Shown one piece after another: positions 2,494-41,381 of a stretch of 45,487 nucleotides of DNA (positions are counted from its first letter, which is position 1; every line of letters starts with the position of its first letter). Location: positions 1 through 45,487 of the forward strand of contig FLMG01000322.1 of assembly GCA_900088475.1 (NCBI GenBank). The letters run 5' to 3'. The stretch is from Hyphochytrium catenoides. Its lineage: Eukaryota; Protista; Hyphochytriomycota. The position numbers were made by a program, and so were the translations under genes. A model generated the notes under the pieces. That model was not told the DNA's origin. It saw only the letters and a program-made list of their open reading frames with translations, and did no database searches.

Positions 2494-4664
2494 TCAAGAG
2501 CGATGTGTGCCGTGTCTGCTCATGTGATCATGAGGGAAAGGCAGTTGTGCTGGGCCTGGGTGAGGGAGAGAGCCCATCCCTGGTGCTCCCGGAGCGCCAG
2601 AAGAAGGCGGAGGAAAGTAATGACGTGGTGCCATTCCTTGGAATTGAGGATTCTGCCCATTGTTTCCAAGCATTGAGTATAGGTCAGCCCATGGAATATC
2701 CTCGTACTGCTGCTGATACGGTGCTGGCCGGTAAGCAAGAGATGGGTCGAGGCAGGGCCTTTTGGCTGGAGGCTGAAGAGAAGCGGAGGAGTCTGCCGCT
2801 GCGGCTGCTGCTGCCGCCGCCGCTAGATGCATTGATGCTCCAACCCGACTGTGGACAAACAGAGGAGACAAAGGAAATTAGAAGGTCAAACTAACTGGGC
2901 ATTGACACCGAAAAGAAGAGGCCTAAGGCCAGACTGGTCTAGAAAAAGGTTAAAAAAAGAAAGAGAGAGAGAGAGAGAAAGAGAGAGAAAGAGGGATGAC
3001 TTACTCTTTTTGCTGGTGAAAGCTTGCCCTTCTACTGGAAAAGATAGAGAAAGGGTCGGATCTCAGTATGTGCACACAGGTATTGTTGTCATCCGCTTGC
3101 GGTTGGAAGAAAACGACCTCAAATCTATGATAAATATCTTGTCCATGTTGCCCCTGGCCTCTAGGAGCTGACCAGCCGTAGTGCCAAGCTTTGCAGTCTC
3201 CGTTGAATTCAAAGACAGCGGTCTGCATACCACCAGCTGCAGCTATTGAAAGTTGCTGAAAAGAGACACAGACAAGAAGAGAGCGTAAGCATTGGGAAGG
3301 CAAAGTGGTGAAGAAAGCATGTGGGCTAATACCTTCACTTGGCCCTCAATCCAGGGTCTCTGAGGGTGGTCCTTGTCTCTCTTTAAGTTCTGAATCTCCT
3401 GAGTAGTCATCTTGCTTCCTACTCGGATGTTGGGTCCAGAGGACTTGAGAATGTCCTCGTTCATGGTAGCAGGATCCATTGGGAAGACGCGACCATAGGC
3501 AAAGAGGCCGAACTTGGGCTTTTCTGCAGGACGTAGAACGAGCACATAGGAGGAGAGGGGACAGTCAATAAGCACGTACTCCCAGAAGACAAAGAGAGAT
3601 AACGAATGGTCTTACCGCCAGGATTATAGGACGGCGTGCTATTGCTTGAGTCCATGAAGGAGGTGTGGACCTTTATGGAATCTCCACAGAAGCCAGAAGA
3701 GAAGTGGACGCCATTTCTACAGCTTGGGAAGCAGCGAAGGTTCTTATGACCTCCCTTCTTGTTATTCCGCTGATACTTGGGAGCAAACATTCTCATTCCT
3801 TCTCTTGGGGCGATGAAGTTTGCTTGCACATGCAGACCGCCGTGTTGAGACGACGAACCCGATGAATGTGCAACTGCAGATGAAGATGAAGCTCCAGATG
3901 GAGCTCCGGGTCTTTCTGCGTGGTCATCTACACCACTGACATGCGGGTTGTGCACGAATCTTTGTGTTGAGCCGTCCATGGGGTCGACAAATAAGGCGTT
4001 AACTGGCTCGAACTGATAGCCGATAGGCTCTACCAGGAAAGAGTCCCTTAGGGCGAGCAGTTTAGAGAAGCGGGTGTCTTCTGGTTGGTTGAACATATCC
4101 ATGAGCTTGGAGCGCGATGGGTGCTTCATCTGTAAATGAGACAGAGAGGACACGAAAGAAGAGAGAGAGAGAGAGAAGACAAGGATGTCAGAGACACAGA
4201 AACGAGAGAGGGAGAAAGGTAGCGAGTGAGATACCTACCACGGATGTATAGACGTTAGATCCTTCTGGGGGACGAACAACGGTAAGGCAATCGTATCCTG
4301 AAACTTCCTGAGCCTCGTGAGCCACAGCCTGAATGCACTCTTCGAACTGTGGAACAGAGTCTTCTTTCACTTTCATCACACTGACCATTATCACGTCGCT
4401 GCCAGCGGAAGGAGAGTCTGGAGAGGAGGAAGAAGAGAGAGAAGGACCAAGGGCCGGCGCTGAAGAAGAAGAGACAGATTGTCGCTTGGCCTTAAGAGCT
4501 GAAAGAGAGCTGGCTGCAGCTTCTTCTGGCGAGAGAGAGAGAAAAGAAGATGCTGAGTGCGGAGAAGAGAGAGAGGAAGAGGGTGATCCTTCGTCTTCTT
4601 GCGCTCGAAGATCGCTGCGAATTGGTCGAGTCTCCGTTGTCCTTGCCGTGGCTTTTCTTAGCAT
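2494..4664 (-). CDS. Uncharacterised protein, paralog A: ABM-like domain + conserved KNLRCFP/Cys-His domain + low-complexity tail (putative transcription factor). Exons 4664-4239, 4129-3616, 3523-3333, 3255-3005, 2848-2494
   Basis: Five exons join in frame with canonical GT-AG sites (phases 0,1,0,2). Colinear and homologous with the gene at 38836-41381. Start codon uncertain; a 5' exon is possible. Confidence refers to gene existence; function is inferred. Confidence 0.85.
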
Positions 4665-11132: not shown

Positions 11133-13067
11133 CTATACATCGACGCTTTGGCCCTCATGCTGCCTGTTGATGAACTTGAAGAGCTCCGTTTGTACGTCTA
11201 GCAGCAGGCCAATAACCGGATAGCCTACTCCTTGATGCAGAAGAAACCCTGACAGATCCCCACAGAAAGATGCGACATCTGTCAGGGTAGGGAACAGTTC
11301 TCTCAGTCTCTCGAGCTTCTGTTGCCCTCCGTCGCGCTGAGCTTCATCCCTTTCTGCTGCGTTGCTCTCACTCCCTCCTCCGTCTCTCTGCACATTCTCA
11401 TCAACCATACGGCCTTCCGTTCCAAGGCCTTGGCCTCTGCCCCTTTTCGGGTCTTTGCTGTGTGTTAGATAGTCCGAGACGATAGACTCTTCTAGAATCT
11501 CCGCAAGAGCCTCAACATCTATATCCCCTGTGGCCAGCGAGAGAGTGACATCGCAGGAGGTAGGTCTCGCGTCATCCACATTCACATATTCCTGCACGGA
11601 TGGAGGAAGAGGTGGAGGATAGGCCTGACTTCCACCTCTTTGTCTTGCGATGTGATGTTGCGCAGCCTCCCAGAGCCTGCTAAGAAGGTCATGAAGGGCC
11701 TCTAGCGCTGTATGGATGTCTTCCTCAGCGGTGGAGGAGGTGAGAGAACGCACGTTGCTCCTACTTCTTCCAGACTGTTTACCTGCAGAGTGGAGGTGTG
11801 CTTTGGCAAAGCTTTCCTTTAGAATGCTCAGAGCGAGAGACTTCCAACATTCACTCATCCAGTGCAGGGCCTTAGATACATCGACTGCAAGCGAGGAGGG
11901 AGGGAGAGATGAAGTTGTCATCCTCGATTGCTCCAGTGTAGGGAGAACTGAGCTAAGCAATCTTCTTCGATAATTTAGCTTCCACGCTTGTATGATTCCT
12001 AGTCGGAGAGGATTGGCATTAGCAGAGGGAAAGAGCATTATCCGTGTCCTAGAGAGATTGAGATGTTCATAGTCTAGATGTGCAGCATTGTCGTCCATAA
12101 GCAAAAGGACATTTCTCTTCTGCCTCAGCATTTTGGTCTCAAAGCGTTCCAGCCAATTGCAGAAGAGTCTCTGTGTCATCCAACCCTGGTCATTGGCATG
12201 CCACTCTACAGGGAGAGATATAGGAAATGAGTCTTGAGAGAACGAGGAGAAGTCCCGTGGCTGATACTCATTGCTCACAACCAGAAGTCTCTCTTTCTCT
12301 CCCGCCATGTTGCAGCAGAAAAGAACCGTGAGGCCCCTTTGATTTGCCCCAAGACCCTGTGAGGAGAGAATGCCCGGCGGAAGAGGGACATTCGCATATT
12401 CTAGCACTGATTCTCCCACGACATAGACATCAGAGGGCTCGTAGTCATCTAGAATGAGTTCCAGCTTCTTGCTCCAGTTCTGACCAGCAGACAAAGGCAA
12501 GGATGTCCCGTCTGTAGAGTCCGAAGGGTTGGCACTCTTGTGCAGGATTTTGTACCGCCGCTTGAAGGAGTCGAGCCATCCGTTCGAGCCCTTAAAGCTA
12601 ACATTTCCTAATCTGTTGGCTATTGATAGAGCGCGCTGCTGAAGCTTGGGCCCAGTAACGGGTATACCCTTCGCTCTCGCCGCTTGATACCACTTCCAGA
12701 CGAGAAGATTAACTTCATCGCCCTTGGACTTAGAGACCTTGCGCTTGTTATCCACTGCATAGTTAGAAGTGTAGTCCTGGATGTACTCAGCCCGTCTTCG
12801 CAAGATTCGCTGTATGGAGGACTTCGAGATGTTGAACTTTGTTGCTAGGGCACGCTGTCCCAGCTTTTGGCGTTCTGCAGCTCTGATGATCTCTATTTTC
12901 TTTTCTAACGAGAGATAGGAACGGTCTTCCTTTTTGCCAGAACTGCCTTGCTCTAAAGGTTTGTCGCTTTCATTGAAGAGTGCGGCTTCTCCATCCTTAG
13001 CATCTTGTCTTGGCCGTTTTGGAGCTTTATTCTCTATCTCTTCAGTTCGGTACTGCTGCCTCTTCAT
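11133..13067 (-). CDS. pogo/Tigger transposase-derived protein (CENP-B/TIGD-like), 644 aa, probably catalytically inactive
   Basis: Intronless ORF. CENP-B N-terminal HTH (LSLEKKIEII...ALATKFNISKSSIQRILRRR), Tc5 HTH (LLVWKWYQAARAKGIPVTGPKLQQRAL...FKGSNGWLDSFKRRY) and DDE_1 motifs (LTVLFCCNMAGEK, GWMT, VLLLMDDNAAH, GIIQAWKLNYRRRLL). Confidence 0.92.
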   Translation of the reverse strand: MKRQQYRTEEIENKAPKRPRQDAKDGEAALFNESDKPLEQGSSGKKEDRSYLSLEKKIEIIRAAERQKLGQRALATKFNISKSSIQRILRRRAEYIQDYTSNYAVDNKRKVSKSKGDEVNLLVWKWYQAARAKGIPVTGPKLQQRALSIANRLGNVSFKGSNGWLDSFKRRYKILHKSANPSDSTDGTSLPLSAGQNWSKKLELILDDYEPSDVYVVGESVLEYANVPLPPGILSSQGLGANQRGLTVLFCCNMAGEKERLLVVSNEYQPRDFSSFSQDSFPISLPVEWHANDQGWMTQRLFCNWLERFETKMLRQKRNVLLLMDDNAAHLDYEHLNLSRTRIMLFPSANANPLRLGIIQAWKLNYRRRLLSSVLPTLEQSRMTTSSLPPSSLAVDVSKALHWMSECWKSLALSILKESFAKAHLHSAGKQSGRSRSNVRSLTSSTAEEDIHTALEALHDLLSRLWEAAQHHIARQRGGSQAYPPPLPPSVQEYVNVDDARPTSCDVTLSLATGDIDVEALAEILEESIVSDYLTHSKDPKRGRGQGLGTEGRMVDENVQRDGGGSESNAAERDEAQRDGGQQKLERLRELFPTLTDVASFCGDLSGFLLHQGVGYPVIGLLLDVQTELFKFINRQHEGQSVDV

Positions 13068-32830: not shown

Positions 32831-37925
<5,095 letters not shown>

Positions 37926-38835: not shown

Positions 38836-41381
38836 TCAGAAGAACTCCAATTGTCCTGGAGTGTGGACGATGCTATTGGCCATTGCTTGTGAGGTTGCGA
38901 TATGTGAAGGAAGAAGGTCCACAGATTGTTGCAGTCCCCCGTCTGTTGGGAGAGGAGGTATAGAGAACATGGAATAGAGATCCACCCATGGAATATCTGT
39001 AGGAGTGATCGTGCTGATGTTCGCCCTCTTTCTCTTCAAGAATGGCTCATCAGGCGGGGGAGGCGATGAAGGAAGAAGGTCCAAGTCCACATCTTCCACC
39101 CCTCCAGACGCACTACATCAGAGGCAAATTGGTGATAAGCGAGTTAACCTCGTGAAGGACTGCAGGGCAGGATACAGACTAAAGAGGCGCGCGCGCGAGA
39201 GATAGAACGCTAGAGCGAGGAAAAGAGAGAGACTGAAAGAGAAAGGGAGCGAGAGATCCTGAGGGAAAAAAGAAGAAGAGAGCGAGAGAGAGAGAGGAGA
39301 GAGAGCGAGACTGGCCGGCTTGCACAATATTTGGGGAAGTGAAAATATAAGCACTGCTTCTGTGAACAGATAAAGGGCAGATGAGCGCCACAAGGGGTAG
39401 AACGCAGGGCTTACTCTGAGGCTGCTGAGCTTCCTGGAGGCTTCCTACTGGAGCCAATAGAGAATGGGTCTGACTGTAGAACGTATACGCAGTACAGCTT
39501 CTTCCTGAATGGCTTGAAGAAAAGGGCCTCAAAACAATGAAGAGGATCGTTGCCTTGCTGTCCCTGTCCTCGGGGTGCCGCCCAGCCATAATGCCAGGCC
39601 TTAAAATCACCGTTGAACTCAAAAATCGCTGCCTGGAGGGCGCCATCTCCTGAAGCTCCCTAAGCATCAAGCGGGCATGAGTAGGCTGGTTCACCTCTAA
39701 GTATTCAACCTCTATCTTTCTTCCTGACATACCGCACAAGGGATATCTCTTATCATAAACGTTCTTGCCTAACGACCGCCTTATCAAGCAATATGGCCCA
39801 TCGCCTTCTTTTTAATTTTAAGCTATCATTTACCTTGAAGACGCCTGGCACCCATGGTCTCTGAGGGTGGTCGCGATCCCTGACGAGCTTATCAATCTCT
39901 TCGACTTCAAAAGTATCTCCCACGCTAACTAACGGGCCTGAGGACTCTAGGGTCTCCTCGTCTAAAACTCCGGCCTCATAAGGAATGAACCGCGCATAAG
40001 CTAGCGTACGGTTGGACTTCGATGATCGCAGGCCGCAGACACGGATACCTATCATAGAGATACTGTGATTCAGTGGAGAAGGAAATCTGCCGAATGATGA
40101 GGTTCAGGAAAACTTATGTTGCTATAGAGGGTAACACCACAAAAGTACCAGTCATCACCCAGGCGGAGGGTGTAGCGTGACCAATGAGATAGAGAGGAAA
40201 AGAGCTGAATACCTCCTGTAGATGTCACTCTGCTGATCGACACATGCACTTTGATAGAGTCCCCGCAGAAGCCTGAACTGACGTGCACGCCGTTTCTACA
40301 GTCAGGAAAGCATCGAAGATTCTTGTGTCCTCCTTTTTTGCTATTCCGCAGATAGCGCGACTTGAAGAGTGGCCCTCCCCTCATAGAGACAAATGCAGCT
40401 TCCACTTGCAACCCGTTCGGATTGTAGCACGAGTCATTATAGCAAAGCTCTGCGTCTGACTCTGGAGGACCTGACGTGTCAACCACTTCCACCTCTCTTT
40501 GACTTGTGAAGAGTTCTTGGATCTTGCCAGAGGTCGGCTCTATTGTGACAGCATTGCCCTCTTCAAACTGATATGTAGGGGGTGAGATCAGGAGAGAGTC
40601 TCGTGTTGAAAGAAGCTTTGTGAACTCAGGGTTTTCCTGAGAGCCGAAGAGTCTGACAAGTTCTGATCTCGACCTGTGATGGATCTATGCAAAGAAGAGG
40701 GATGAGAACGTAGGAGGCGCTAAGCCAAAGGCAAACACGTAGGAAACGATCGTGAGAAGAAAAGAGAAGAGACATCGAATCGAAGGAGAGCTCAATAGTG
40801 CTACAGGCCTACTAAGACTAGCGAGATAACGGCAGACGGAGCGTTGAGACACGTTGAAAGGATGGGGATGCTTTTCGGGTAAGTGGTAGCGCAGAGGAAA
40901 CAGCCATGGTGACACCTCCCTCCAAGGCATCTCATGCTGGAGAATCAAGTTGATAGTGTTATCCTACCACGAGAAGGTAGAGGTCTGATCCTGGGTATGG
41001 AAGGACAAGTGTAACCGCGTCGACTGAAAGCGTCTTATTAACCACAGCCATCATATTCTTCAAGCACTTCTCCAACTCCAGCTTGCAGTTATCCTTTGCC
41101 TTCAAGACCATAGTCATTACCACCTAGGTCCAAACGCATCGGAAAAGGTTAGCCACGAGCATAACACCGCAGATCCCCACCCTGTGCCGTTGCCTTACCT
41201 TGCCATCCTTCTCTCCAAAGTGGTCAATGACGCGCCTTGTATTACCCTTCGTCTCTAGCGGGTTGAGCCTTCCAAGAATTCGCTCTTCCTCCTGTAGGGA
41301 GTTTGCAAACTCGAGCCCCTTGATCATCTCATCAATATTATCTAAGTTGCTCTCCAACTTCACTCCATTCAGACTATTCAT
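38836..41381 (-). CDS. Uncharacterised protein, paralog B of the 2494-4664 gene (ABM-like + KNLRCFP/Cys-His domain). Exons 41381-41199, 41123-40968, 40684-40213, 40048-39834, 39659-39415, 39112-38836
   Basis: Six exons join in frame. Contains YLRNSKKGGHKNLRCFPDCRNGVHVSSGFCGDSIKVH, RDRDHPQRPW, FEFNGDFKAWHYGWAAPRGQGQQG, SDPFSI and DIPWVDLYSM, all matching paralog A. Exon 5 is in a frame not shown in the ORF track. Confidence 0.87.

What the first reader, a model, noticed from the sequence alone, without database searches (positions are those of the whole stretch)
2494..4664. Candidate undescribed ligand-sensing transcription factor family: ABM-like domain fused to a novel Cys/His beta-rich domain (paralog A)
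Seen: the spliced protein is a Ser-rich N-terminus, then VIMVSVMKVKEDSVPQFEECIQAVAHEAQEVSGYDCLTVVRPPEGSNVYTSVMKHPSRSKLMDMFNQPE...LLALRDSFLVEP, a linker, a ~200 aa conserved domain, poly-Ala, PPAKRP and a Pro/Gln-rich tail. Knowledge: the first block has the beta-alpha-beta-beta-alpha pattern of antibiotic-biosynthesis-monooxygenase (ABM, dimeric alpha/beta barrel) domains (VK...FE...A...G...VVRP..G...Y), a fold that binds heme, quinones and other small aromatics. Poly-Ala/Pro/Gln tails with a basic NLS-like patch are typical of eukaryotic transcription factors. Inference: a small-molecule or redox sensor wired directly to a DNA-binding domain, like a bacterial one-component regulator, in a eukaryote. 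I know of no named family with this architecture.
Basis: partly seen in the sequence, partly recalled or inferred. Interest (0 to 1): 0.88.

Follow-up and report, generated by a model that had tools for sequence, protein, structure and literature searches.

The report
ABM-fold plus Ig-fold transcription factor candidate
This intact five-exon gene encodes a protein that joins a small ABM-type barrel domain to a basic, zinc-knuckle beta-sandwich domain shaped like the DNA-binding domains of velvet, NF-kB, NDT80 and p53; it is conserved but unstudied in oomycetes and is most likely an uncharacterised nuclear transcription factor.

Summary
**Observation: confirmed.** A minus-strand gene (4664..2494) has five exons, all introns are GT..AG, and it encodes 578 aa. 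The layout is a Ser-rich N-terminus, an ABM-like domain, a linker, a conserved ~220-aa domain, poly-Ala, an NLS-like patch and a Pro/Gln-rich tail.

**ABM reading: supported.**
- Pfam gives only a sub-threshold hit (E 0.044).
- An AlphaFold model of the orthologous oomycete domain (pLDDT 91) matches solved ABM proteins (SnoaB, LsrG, Rv0793) at Foldseek E 7e-8 and TM 0.75-0.87.

**DNA-binding reading of the central domain: supported by fold and context, not proven.**
- The model (pLDDT 89) is an all-beta sandwich.
- Its best solved and Swiss-Prot matches are almost all Ig-fold transcription factors (velvet Z 7.0-7.7). The scores are middling.
- The domain is strongly basic, with a median net charge of +9.
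- It has an invariant C-x3-C-x4-H-x5-C motif.
- An NLS-like basic cluster follows it in 85 of 109 relatives.

**"No named family": only partly right.**
- The same ABM-plus-domain architecture exists as "hypothetical protein" in many oomycetes.
- The central domain is a large stramenopile family.
- ESM Atlas labels suggest it is already catalogued as Pfam 38.1 PF28397 (DG1062_N). I could not test that.

**Ligand sensing: untested.** Dimerisation through the ABM barrel is at least as likely.

The scan has noted this domain family elsewhere in the same genome (s1-350052).

The parts
4239..4664 (-). Exon 1 (aa 1-142). Holds the start ATG at 4664-4662, the Ser-rich non-conserved N-terminus (4664-4398) and the first half of the ABM-like domain (4397-4239).
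   Evidence: Pfam ABM E 0.044, profile positions 2-53 of 78.
4130..4238 (-). Intron 1 (GT..AG, phase 0). It splits the ABM-like domain between YTSV and MKH.
   Evidence: The same intron position occurs in paralog B and in metagenome relative L002. The oomycete-only HMM aligns across the junction.
3616..4129 (-). Exon 2. Holds the second half of the ABM-like domain (4129-4007), a Ser/Gly/His-rich linker, and the start of the central domain (from 3856).
3734..3778 (-). Basic beta-hairpin KYQRNNKKGGHKNLR (aa 260-274). R263 is invariant; Y, N, N, G, K, N and R are at least 90% conserved across the family. This is the proposed DNA-contact loop.
   Evidence: Alignment A1. In the model these residues form strands 27-32 and 38-40. 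The position is roughly that of VosA loop A, whose Lys/Arg residues are needed for DNA binding (PMC3876986). The equivalence is inferred, not shown.
3686..3733 (-). Putative zinc knuckle C275-x3-C279-x4-H284-x5-C290.
   Evidence: The three Cys are invariant and the His is at least 90% conserved in 124 domains. Metal binding was not tested.
3524..3615 (-). Intron 2 (GT..AG, phase 1), at the same position as in paralog B.
   Evidence: An alternative GTACGT donor 36 nt downstream is not favoured.
3333..3523 (-). Exon 3, the middle of the central domain. It includes the conserved RDKDHPQRPW segment.
3256..3332 (-). Intron 3 (GT..AG).
3005..3255 (-). Exon 4, the C-terminal part of the central domain. 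It holds FEFNGDCKAWHYGW (WHYGW at 3189-3172) and the terminal FSIFSSRRA motif (3051-3025). The domain envelope ends at 3016.
2849..3004 (-). Intron 4 (GT..AG).
2494..2848 (-). Exon 5. Holds poly-Ala (2823-2794), the NLS-like PPAKRPCLD (2772-2746), the conserved C-terminal motif DIPWADLYSML (2700-2668), a Pro/Gly/Gln-rich tail, and the stop codon at 2496-2494.
   Evidence: The [ILV]PW.[DE][LM]Y motif is present in 21 of 28 ABM-type relatives, and in 13 further relatives without an ABM hit (at least P0172-P0182 look N-terminally truncated).
38836..41381 (-). Paralog B (6 exons, 515 aa). Same ABM-like + central domain + KRKR + PW-motif architecture.
   Evidence: It groups with gene A in the tree (94/85).

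Best explanation
Gene A encodes a nuclear, sequence-specific DNA-binding regulator.

**Central domain.** The ~220-aa domain (aa 234-457) is an s-type immunoglobulin-like beta-sandwich of the class used by velvet, Rel/NF-kB/NFAT, NDT80/MRF, p53, T-box, CP2 and COE factors. It is proposed to contact DNA through a conserved basic hairpin (YQRNNKKGG.KNLR). That hairpin would be held in shape by an adjacent C-x3-C-x4-H-x5-C zinc knuckle.

**ABM-fold domain.** The N-terminal domain (aa 90-183) most likely supplies a homodimer interface, as ABM barrels generally do. This would let two DNA-binding domains read a dyad site. It may additionally bind a small molecule.

**Tail.** A basic patch after the domain (PPAKRPCLD here, KRKR in relatives) would direct nuclear import. 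The low-complexity tail, with the conserved [ILV]PW.[DE]LY motif, would recruit the transcription machinery or a partner.

**Shown:** the gene model, both folds (modelled on close relatives), the conservation patterns, the charge, and the placement of the basic clusters.

**Inferred:** DNA binding, zinc binding, dimerisation, nuclear localisation and activation.
For: **Gene and orthogroup**
- The spliced ORF is intact, with canonical introns.
- The same architecture is found in Plasmopara, Phytophthora, Peronospora, Bremia, Pythium, Globisporangium and Lagenidium proteins, and in paralog B.

**ABM domain**
- Pfam gives weak ABM hits in gene A and in two orthologues, E 0.03-0.06.
- The AF2 model has pLDDT 91 and a beta-alpha-beta-beta-alpha-beta topology.
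- Foldseek returns 150 PDB hits at E<=1e-3, all of the top ones ABM proteins. The best is SnoaB at E 7e-8, and TM reaches 0.87.

**Central domain, fold**
- The AF2 model has pLDDT 89 and pTM 0.89 and is all-beta.
- The top PDB Foldseek hits are velvet, p53, MRF, STAT and EBF.
- VIA gives Z 7.7 for VeA, 7.0 for VosA, 6.1 for Brachyury and NF-kB p52, and 5.9 for NFAT. These align 133-144 residues, against about 90-120 for generic Ig domains.
- 29 of the top 30 Swiss-Prot matches are Ig-fold transcription factors.
- In the AFDB cluster search, an Albugo 'NDT80 domain-containing protein' matches at E 2e-8.
- Language-model neighbours are LAG1, Velvet, P53, NDT80, SPT23/MGA2 and CP2.

**Central domain, context**
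- Median net charge is +9 over 128 domains, and 99% are positive.
- A basic cluster lies 12-92 aa after the domain in 85 of 109 proteins. Shuffling gives a mean of 21.7 and a maximum of 31. Later windows of the same proteins have it in 6 of 56.
- 66 full-length relatives carry essentially no other Pfam domain (one lone ARL2_Bind_BART hit). They consist of the domain plus long low-complexity tails.
- R, C, P, C and C are invariant and H is near-invariant.
Against: - No experiment or DNA-bound structure exists for any member.
- Structural scores are middling: Z is below 8, PDB Foldseek E is about 2e-3, and TM is 0.3-0.45. The tool's own note says such scores can reflect only a common arrangement.
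- Generic Ig-like sandwiches score Z 5-5.7.
- No sequence-level link was found to any known DNA-binding family. Pfam gave none for 124 members and the PDB profile search gave none.
- Both models were made on relatives, not on the window's own protein. The central-domain proxy P0001 is 55% identical to the gene A exon-2 query. The window's ABM pieces are 22-38% identical to the ABM proxy P0003.
- Gene A's post-domain basic patch is weaker than the KRKR of its relatives.
- No RNA evidence for expression or splicing was obtained.
Confidence: 0.6

Rival explanations
1. The ABM domain is a true small-molecule, heme or redox sensor that gates DNA binding, making this a eukaryotic one-component regulator.
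For: - The ABM fold is confirmed.
- ABM-family proteins bind heme, quinols, polyketides and phospho-AI-2 (established knowledge of IsdG, YgiN, ActVA-Orf6/SnoaB and LsrG).
- Helix-3 and strand-4 residues (R-D-S, P, Y, E) are near-invariant from the window to Phytophthora.
- The fusion has been kept across a deep split.
Against: - No ligand-binding residues were identified.
- The Pfam ABM score is below threshold (14.4 vs 23.1 bits).
- The conserved residues could equally serve a dimer or inter-domain interface.
- Paralog B's ABM is much more diverged (34 vs 51 bits).
- Most members of the DNA-binding-domain family have no ABM domain.
Confidence: 0.22
2. The central domain is an Ig-like module that does not bind DNA, for example a protein-, glycan- or membrane-binding sandwich. 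On this reading the protein is not a transcription factor.
For: - Z stays below 8.
- Non-TF sandwiches (INTS7 C-terminus, OST subunit, CrdA, arrestin-like VDUP-1, complement MG domains) score Z 5-6.
- There is no sequence link to known DNA-binding domains.
Against: - The top-ranked matches in three independent libraries are overwhelmingly DNA-binding factors, and they cover more of the domain.
- The domain has a strong positive charge, and a basic cluster is positionally conserved after it.
- Gene A shows no evident signal peptide or transmembrane segment by eye. This was not tested with a predictor.
- The low-complexity tails are of the kind typical of transcription factors.
Confidence: 0.17
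3. The basic zinc-knuckle domain binds RNA or unspecific nucleic acid rather than specific DNA sites.
For: - The domain has a high positive charge.
- The isolated N-terminal piece draws weak CCHC/SWIM-type zinc-finger neighbours in the Atlas, at 0.62, which is a lead only.
Against: The fold matches are to double-stranded-DNA-binding factors. None of the top structural matches is an RNA-binding protein.
Confidence: 0.06

Closest known systems
Velvet domain regulators (VosA, VelB, VeA; Pfam PF11754)
   Same: - Velvet is the best structural match: VIA Z 7.7 and 7.0 with 141-143 residues aligned, and Foldseek probability 0.98-1.00.
- Both are a twisted beta-sandwich of about 150-200 aa with a basic loop or hairpin after strand 1. 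In VosA the Lys/Arg residues of that loop are required for DNA binding (PMC3876986).
- Both are lineage-restricted developmental-type regulators with disordered tails.
   Different: - There is no sequence similarity. None of 124 members hits the Velvet HMM at E<=1.
- This family has an invariant Cys3-His motif, which velvet lacks.
- It is found in stramenopiles (and possibly haptophytes and amoebozoans), not fungi.
- It is fused here to an ABM domain.
- TM-scores are only 0.3-0.45.
Rel-homology / NFAT / CSL RHR-N, NDT80-MRF, p53, T-box, STAT, CP2 and COE(EBF) DNA-binding domains (the Ig-fold or 'p53-like' transcription-factor class)
   Same: - It shares the overall s-type Ig sandwich. These proteins fill the hit lists.
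- p53 and EBF also use a Cys/His zinc site to shape DNA-contact loops (established knowledge).
- An Albugo NDT80-annotated protein matches at Foldseek E 2e-8.
   Different: - No HMM-level relationship was found.
- The zinc-motif spacing C-x3-C-x4-H-x5-C differs from EBF's H-x3-C-x2-C-x5-C.
- Its position differs from that of p53's split site.
Pfam PF28397 DG1062_N (Pfam 38.1; named after Dictyostelium DG1062)
   Same: - The ESM Atlas clusters nearest to family members carry this label. For P0048 the scores are 0.89 with 189 shared features and 0.86 with 174. For the P0003 domain it is 0.87 with 169.
- These include oomycete clusters in which 60-73% of members hit PF28397.
- This is probably the same domain family.
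   Different: - It could not be tested directly. The local Pfam copy (24,736 models) lacks the entry, and no DG1062 sequence was available.
- I found no paper on it.
- The name implies no assigned function.
ABM / dimeric alpha+beta barrel proteins (Pfam PF03992: SnoaB, ActVA-Orf6, LsrG, Rv0793, IsdG). As an architectural analogue, Lrp/AsnC regulators, where an HTH is joined to a ferredoxin-like effector/oligomerisation domain.
   Same: - It has the same beta-alpha-beta-beta-alpha-beta fold of about 95 aa, at TM up to 0.87.
- The logic of Lrp/AsnC would apply: a DNA-binding domain joined to a small ferredoxin-like domain that oligomerises and can bind effectors. That comparison is from established knowledge and is an analogy only.
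   Different: - The Pfam score is sub-threshold.
- It is eukaryotic and fused to an Ig-fold domain rather than standing alone or being joined to an HTH.
- No catalytic or ligand residues were recognised.

Membership tests
ABM (PF03992) / dimeric alpha+beta barrel | Ferredoxin-like beta-alpha-beta-beta-alpha-beta domain of about 95-100 aa that superposes on solved ABM proteins. | tested here: met
   The model of orthologue P0003:30-135 (pLDDT 91) matches SnoaB, LsrG and Rv0793 at E 7e-8 to 4e-7 and TM 0.69-0.87. Gene A aligns to the orthologue HMM end to end at 51 bits. The test was done on a proxy, not on the window protein itself.
ABM (PF03992) / dimeric alpha+beta barrel | Pfam HMM score above the gathering threshold (23.1 bits). 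| tested here: not met
   14.4 bits, E 0.044, for exon 1 alone, which is half of the domain. Full-length orthologues score 14.0-14.8 bits. The spliced gene A domain could not be submitted by reference.
ABM (PF03992) / dimeric alpha+beta barrel | Homodimer forming a closed barrel. | not testable with these tools
   No multimer prediction or experiment was available.
Velvet (PF11754) | Match to the Velvet HMM. | tested here: not met
   0 of 124 family domains hit Velvet at E<=1.
Velvet (PF11754) | Velvet/RHD-N-like beta-sandwich fold. | tested here: inconclusive
   Velvet gives the best Z, 7.0-7.7 over about 142 residues, but that is below the level the tool regards as decisive.
NDT80_PhoG, P53, RHD, T-box, CP2, COE (sequence families) | Match to the respective Pfam HMM or to a PDB sequence. 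| tested here: not met
   No such hit was found for 124 domains. The profile search against PDB sequences found nothing at E<=10.
Ig-fold ('p53-like') DNA-binding transcription-factor class | An s-type Ig sandwich whose nearest structural neighbours are DNA-binding factors. | tested here: met
   (29 of the top 30 Swiss-Prot hits).
Ig-fold ('p53-like') DNA-binding transcription-factor class | Sequence-specific DNA binding. | not testable with these tools
   Only indirect signs are available: net charge of +9 and NLS-like clusters.
PF28397 DG1062_N | Match to the Pfam 38.1 HMM. | not testable with these tools
   The model is absent from the local Pfam copy. Atlas labels make membership likely.
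Zinc-knuckle-bearing DNA-binding domains (as in EBF/COE, p53) | Conserved Cys/His tetrad that binds zinc. | tested here: inconclusive
   C275, C279 and C290 are invariant and H284 is at least 90% conserved.

The most novel reading that the evidence does not exclude
The protein is a eukaryotic one-component regulator. On this reading, an ABM-fold domain binds a small aromatic, heme or redox ligand and directly switches dimerisation or DNA binding of a zinc-knuckle Ig-fold DNA-binding domain. That domain would belong to a large, previously unrecognised transcription-factor family of stramenopiles, a sister type to velvet/NF-kB. This would place the origin of this DNA-binding fold before the split of the major eukaryotic groups.
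Probability: 0.2. Interest if true: 0.85.

Novelty: new variant of a known kind. Interest (0 to 1): 0.62.

Why it matters
**Oomycete regulators.** Oomycetes include major crop and fish pathogens, and their transcription-factor repertoire is poorly known. This analysis points to a large family, with hundreds of sequence clusters, that genome annotations list as 'hypothetical'. It has the fold, charge, nuclear-import signature and tail composition of DNA-binding regulators. If confirmed, it adds a whole class of regulators to stramenopile gene-network studies.

**Evolution of the fold.** Confirmation would also extend the velvet / Rel / NDT80 / p53 structural class to another eukaryotic supergroup. 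That bears on how old this DNA-binding fold is.

**The ABM fusion.** The ABM fusion is conserved from this genome to Phytophthora. It is a compact and easily testable case of a possible sensor or dimeriser wired to such a domain.

Tried and rejected
1. **RNA evidence.** Only two soil metatranscriptomes hold a 243-nt piece of exon 1, at about 97.5% identity. No read or contig spans a junction.
2. **Alternative gene model.** A GTACGT donor would add 12 aa in intron 2. Rejected, pending cDNA.
3. **Sequence links of the central domain.** I looked for links to known families in three ways. All were negative.
   - Pfam on exons, on 124 domains and on 66 full-length proteins.
   - A profile search against PDB sequences.
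   - An ABM profile against PDB, which gave only a non-significant TT1380 hit at E 1.6.
4. **Profile searches of the 5.8-billion-protein set (A1, A4).** These were meant to reach named non-stramenopile relatives such as Dictyostelium DG1062. The word index returned only known members.
5. **Literature.** I searched for DG1062, for oomycete velvet/NDT80-like factors and for lineage-specific stramenopile DNA-binding domains. Nothing relevant turned up.
6. **CudA/STAT-like family of Dictyostelium.** I recalled it as a possible relative, but the paper is not held and I had no sequence to test, so I dropped it.
7. **Atlas search with the window's own 80-aa piece.** It gave only weak zinc-finger neighbours at 0.62.
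8. **Submitting the spliced protein.** The spliced gene A protein could not be handed to the search or fold tools, because it has no single reference. Folds therefore rest on close relatives.
Full report
**1. The observation**

The finding lies on the minus strand. Joining 4664-4239, 4129-3616, 3523-3333, 3255-3005 and 2848-2494 gives a 1737-nt frame with no stop, encoding 578 aa. All four introns begin GT and end AG, and they are 109, 92, 77 and 156 nt long.

- a Ser-rich N-terminus (29 Ser in 89 aa);
- an ABM-like block (aa 90-183);
- a Ser/Gly/His linker;
- a conserved domain (aa 234-457);
- ten Ala in a row;
- PPAKRPCLD;
- a Pro/Ala/Ser/Gly/Gln-rich tail.

The plus strand of the region holds only short, low-complexity ORFs. 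The flanks are GA/CT microsatellite-rich intergenic DNA.

**2. Support for the splicing**

No RNA-seq of the organism was reachable. Two soil metatranscriptomes each hold one 243-nt contig over 4418-4660 at about 97.5% identity, and no record crosses a junction. The model therefore rests on homology.

- An HMM built only from oomycete orthologues aligns to gene A from position 2 to 96 across the exon 1/2 junction, with one 2-residue gap (51 bits).
- A family HMM of 124 central domains that excludes the window aligns across junctions 2/3 and 3/4 (190 bits).
- The closest database relative, P0001 on metagenome scaffold L002, is 55% identical to gene A's exon-2 query. It is one continuous ORF through the sites of introns 2 and 3. 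The first half of its ABM domain sits upstream in another frame, behind a GTACGG...TAG intron at exactly the site of gene A's intron 1.
- Paralog B, 34 kb away (41381..38836; six exons, 515 aa), shares the intron positions and the architecture.
- An in-frame alternative donor for intron 2 (GTACGT; +12 aa) exists but scores slightly worse.

**3. The ABM-like domain**

Pfam gives only a sub-threshold ABM hit. Exon 1 alone scores E 0.044 and 14.4 bits against a 23.1-bit cut-off. Lagenidium and Pythium insidiosum orthologues give the same weak hit. A profile search against PDB sequences found only a non-significant match to the ABM protein TT1380.

The fold test is clear. An AlphaFold2 model of the orthologous domain (P0003:30-135, using alignment A2, which also holds the window's pieces) has pLDDT 91 and a beta-alpha-beta-beta-alpha-beta topology. 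Foldseek then finds 150 PDB chains at E<=1e-3. The top ones are all ABM proteins: SnoaB at 7e-8, plus LsrG, Rv0793, ActVA-Orf6 and several structural-genomics 'antibiotic biosynthesis monooxygenases'. TM is 0.69-0.87 over the whole domain.

Nothing tested here bears on ligand binding.

**4. The central domain is a large family**

An exhaustive phmmer search of 1.84 billion representatives, using exon 2 as query, found 357 clusters at E<=1e-3. Most match only the segment around KKGGHKNLRCFPSCRNGVH..GFCGD. A seed HMM shows that 126 of 185 collected proteins hold the whole ~190-aa domain, usually at the N-terminus.

Named members are 'hypothetical' proteins of Aphanomyces and Saprolegnia. AlphaFold DB clusters add Phytophthora, Albugo and Thraustotheca entries, plus A0A2R5-series entries that I recognise as Hondaea, a labyrinthulomycete (the organism names come from my own knowledge of the accession series). 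MMETSP transcripts also occur.

In alignment A1 (124 domains) one Arg, one Pro and three Cys are invariant. Y, N, N, G, K, N, R, F, H, G, F, G, F, W-H-Y, H, S and F are at least 90% conserved. In gene A these are R263, C275, P277, C279, H284 and C290. This gives a C-x3-C-x4-H-x5-C motif directly after the basic segment KYQRNNKKGGHKNLR.

No Pfam model in the local copy matches any of the 124 domains, even at E<=1. No PDB sequence matches the profile. Among 66 full-length members, one stray hit is the only other Pfam domain; they consist of the domain plus long low-complexity sequence.

**5. Fold of the central domain**

The AlphaFold2 model (P0001:75-292, with A1 as its alignment) has pLDDT 89.3 and pTM 0.89. 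It is almost entirely beta.

- *Foldseek against the PDB.* No hit is better than E 2e-3. The list is headed by VosA, VelB and VeA (probability 0.98-1.00), followed by p53/p63/p73, MRF, STAT1 and EBF1.
- *VIA re-alignment.* This gives VeA Z 7.7, VosA 7.0, Brachyury 6.1, NFAT and RelA 5.9, and TBX1, STAT and MRF about 5.5.
- *VIA wide search, independent of Foldseek, over 48,161 chains.* This again puts VosA first (7.0) and NF-kB p52 second (6.1). The factor matches align 135-144 residues, against about 90-120 for generic Ig sandwiches.
- *Swiss-Prot models.* Of the 30 best matches, 29 are Ig-fold transcription factors: velvet proteins, vib-1 (NDT80 type), CP2-like, COE/EBF and CBP60. The best is at E 1.3e-4.
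- *AlphaFold DB clusters.* After many uncharacterised stramenopile relatives, an Albugo 'NDT80 domain-containing protein' matches at E 2e-8 and TM 0.55.

The absolute scores are middling, and the tool warns that Z under 8 may mean only a common arrangement. The argument is therefore the consistency of the neighbours, not any single score.

**6. Context that fits a DNA-binding factor**

- *Charge.* The domain's median net charge is +9 over 128 domains, and 99% are positive.
- *Basic cluster.* An NLS-like cluster lies 12-92 residues after the domain in 85 of 109 proteins. Shuffled tails give a mean of 21.7 and a maximum of 31 in 200 shuffles. Later windows of the same proteins have it in 6 of 56.
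- *In the ABM-type orthogroup* this cluster is KRKR, preceded by an acidic stretch. Gene A has PPAKRPCLD instead, which from my own knowledge resembles the c-Myc import signal PAAKRVKLD.
- *C-terminal motif.* The orthogroup also shares a short linear motif, [ILV]PW.[DE][LM]Y. It is DIPWADLY in A, DIPWVDLY in B and E-L-P-W-S-E-L-Y-N-L-F in oomycetes. Such motifs are typical of partner-binding or activation segments.
- *Comparison with VosA.* Lys/Arg residues of loop A, between strands 1 and 2, are required for DNA binding in VosA (PMC3876986). The invariant basic hairpin of this family sits at about the same place in the fold: model residues 27-40, with model residue 1 aligned to about VosA residue 11. 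I could not inspect residue-level superpositions, so this equivalence is an inference.

**7. The fusion is old and conserved**

Full-length relatives with both domains occur in Plasmopara, many Phytophthora, Peronospora, Peronosclerospora, Hyaloperonospora, Bremia, Nothophytophthora, Globisporangium, Pythium and Lagenidium. All are unnamed.

In a maximum-likelihood tree of the central domain, A and B are sisters (94/85). Together they are sister to the Lagenidium/Pythium/Phytophthora clade (84/91). L002, P0007 and P0008 lie outside that grouping.

A has the longer branch in the central domain (0.85 vs 0.58). B has the more diverged ABM domain (34 vs 51 bits). Gene A has lost the C-x-N-P-H-G-L linker motif that 26 of 28 relatives keep.

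**8. Is it already known?**

I found no paper on it. However, the ESM Atlas, which is labelled with Pfam 38.1, places family members next to clusters carrying PF28397 'DG1062_N'. The scores are 0.89 with 189 shared features and 0.86 with 174 for P0048, and 0.87 with 169 for the P0003 domain. These include oomycete clusters in which 60-73% of members hit that model.

The local Pfam copy lacks this entry, so membership is probable but untested. The name suggests a domain catalogued without a function.

The same Atlas searches list LAG1, Velvet, P53, NDT80, SPT23/MGA2 and CP2 as the next nearest named families. That is an independent, if weak, echo of the fold result.

**9. Verdict**

- The ABM fold is confirmed.
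- A DNA-binding role for the central domain is likely, at about 0.6-0.7.
- 'Undescribed family' is overstated.
- 'Ligand-sensing' is speculation.

My preferred mechanism is an Ig-fold, zinc-stabilised DNA-binding domain that is dimerised by the ABM barrel, with a nuclear-import patch and an activation tail. Sensing by the ABM domain remains an open and attractive possibility.

The source organism was not identified. The gene tree and earlier notes on this genome point to an intron-rich, oomycete-like stramenopile.

Noticed in passing
window 3580-3615 (minus strand, inside intron 2): An in-frame alternative GTACGT donor would shorten intron 2 to 56 nt and add 12 aa (GKTIRYLSLSSG). That stretch loosely resembles the short strand GG-[VI]-[KR]-[IV]-C seen in relatives. 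HMM scores slightly favour the annotated junction. cDNA is needed.
   Followed up: partly
L002:250-460 (metagenome scaffold carrying P0001): The called 298-aa ORF is only the downstream part of a gene. The first half of its ABM domain lies upstream in another frame, separated by an intron at the same position as intron 1 of gene A. The public gene call is therefore truncated.
   Followed up: yes
window 4418-4660: Two soil metatranscriptomes from different studies hold an identical 243-nt contig with the same six differences from the window. Soil metagenomes also hold short pieces. The organism or a close relative therefore lives in soil. The stretch is Ser-codon low complexity, so it is weak evidence of expression.
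   Followed up: partly
window 4186-4259 and 3327-4149 (DNA run X3): The assembly-source-like DNA run shows two contig variants over intron 1 (a 1-base deletion at 4200 and substitutions at 4227/4229). It also shows several substitutions at 3363-3575. This suggests two haplotypes or strains.
   Followed up: no
P0002 (Lagenidium) and P0005 (Pythium insidiosum), residues 1-250/300: These two orthologues carry a long N-terminal extension with a weak TPR hit before the ABM domain. It may be a real extra module or a merged upstream gene model.
   Followed up: no
P0019 and P0020 (Aphanomyces), residues ~100-190: These fall inside the ABM-type clade on a very long branch. By eye their N-terminal region has a beta-alpha-beta-beta-alpha pattern, but the ABM HMM does not detect it. 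They may be highly diverged saprolegnian orthologues.
   Followed up: no
AlphaFold DB clusters H3H5V5 and A0A6G0X670: Some family members are annotated as carrying a cyclic-nucleotide-binding domain or an alpha-kinase domain after the N-terminal Ig-fold domain. This hints that the domain is combined with different signalling modules in other paralogs.
   Followed up: no
window 11133-13067 and 32831-37925: Earlier first-reader notes place a pogo-like transposase and a multi-domain MAP kinase in this window. I did not examine either.
   Followed up: no
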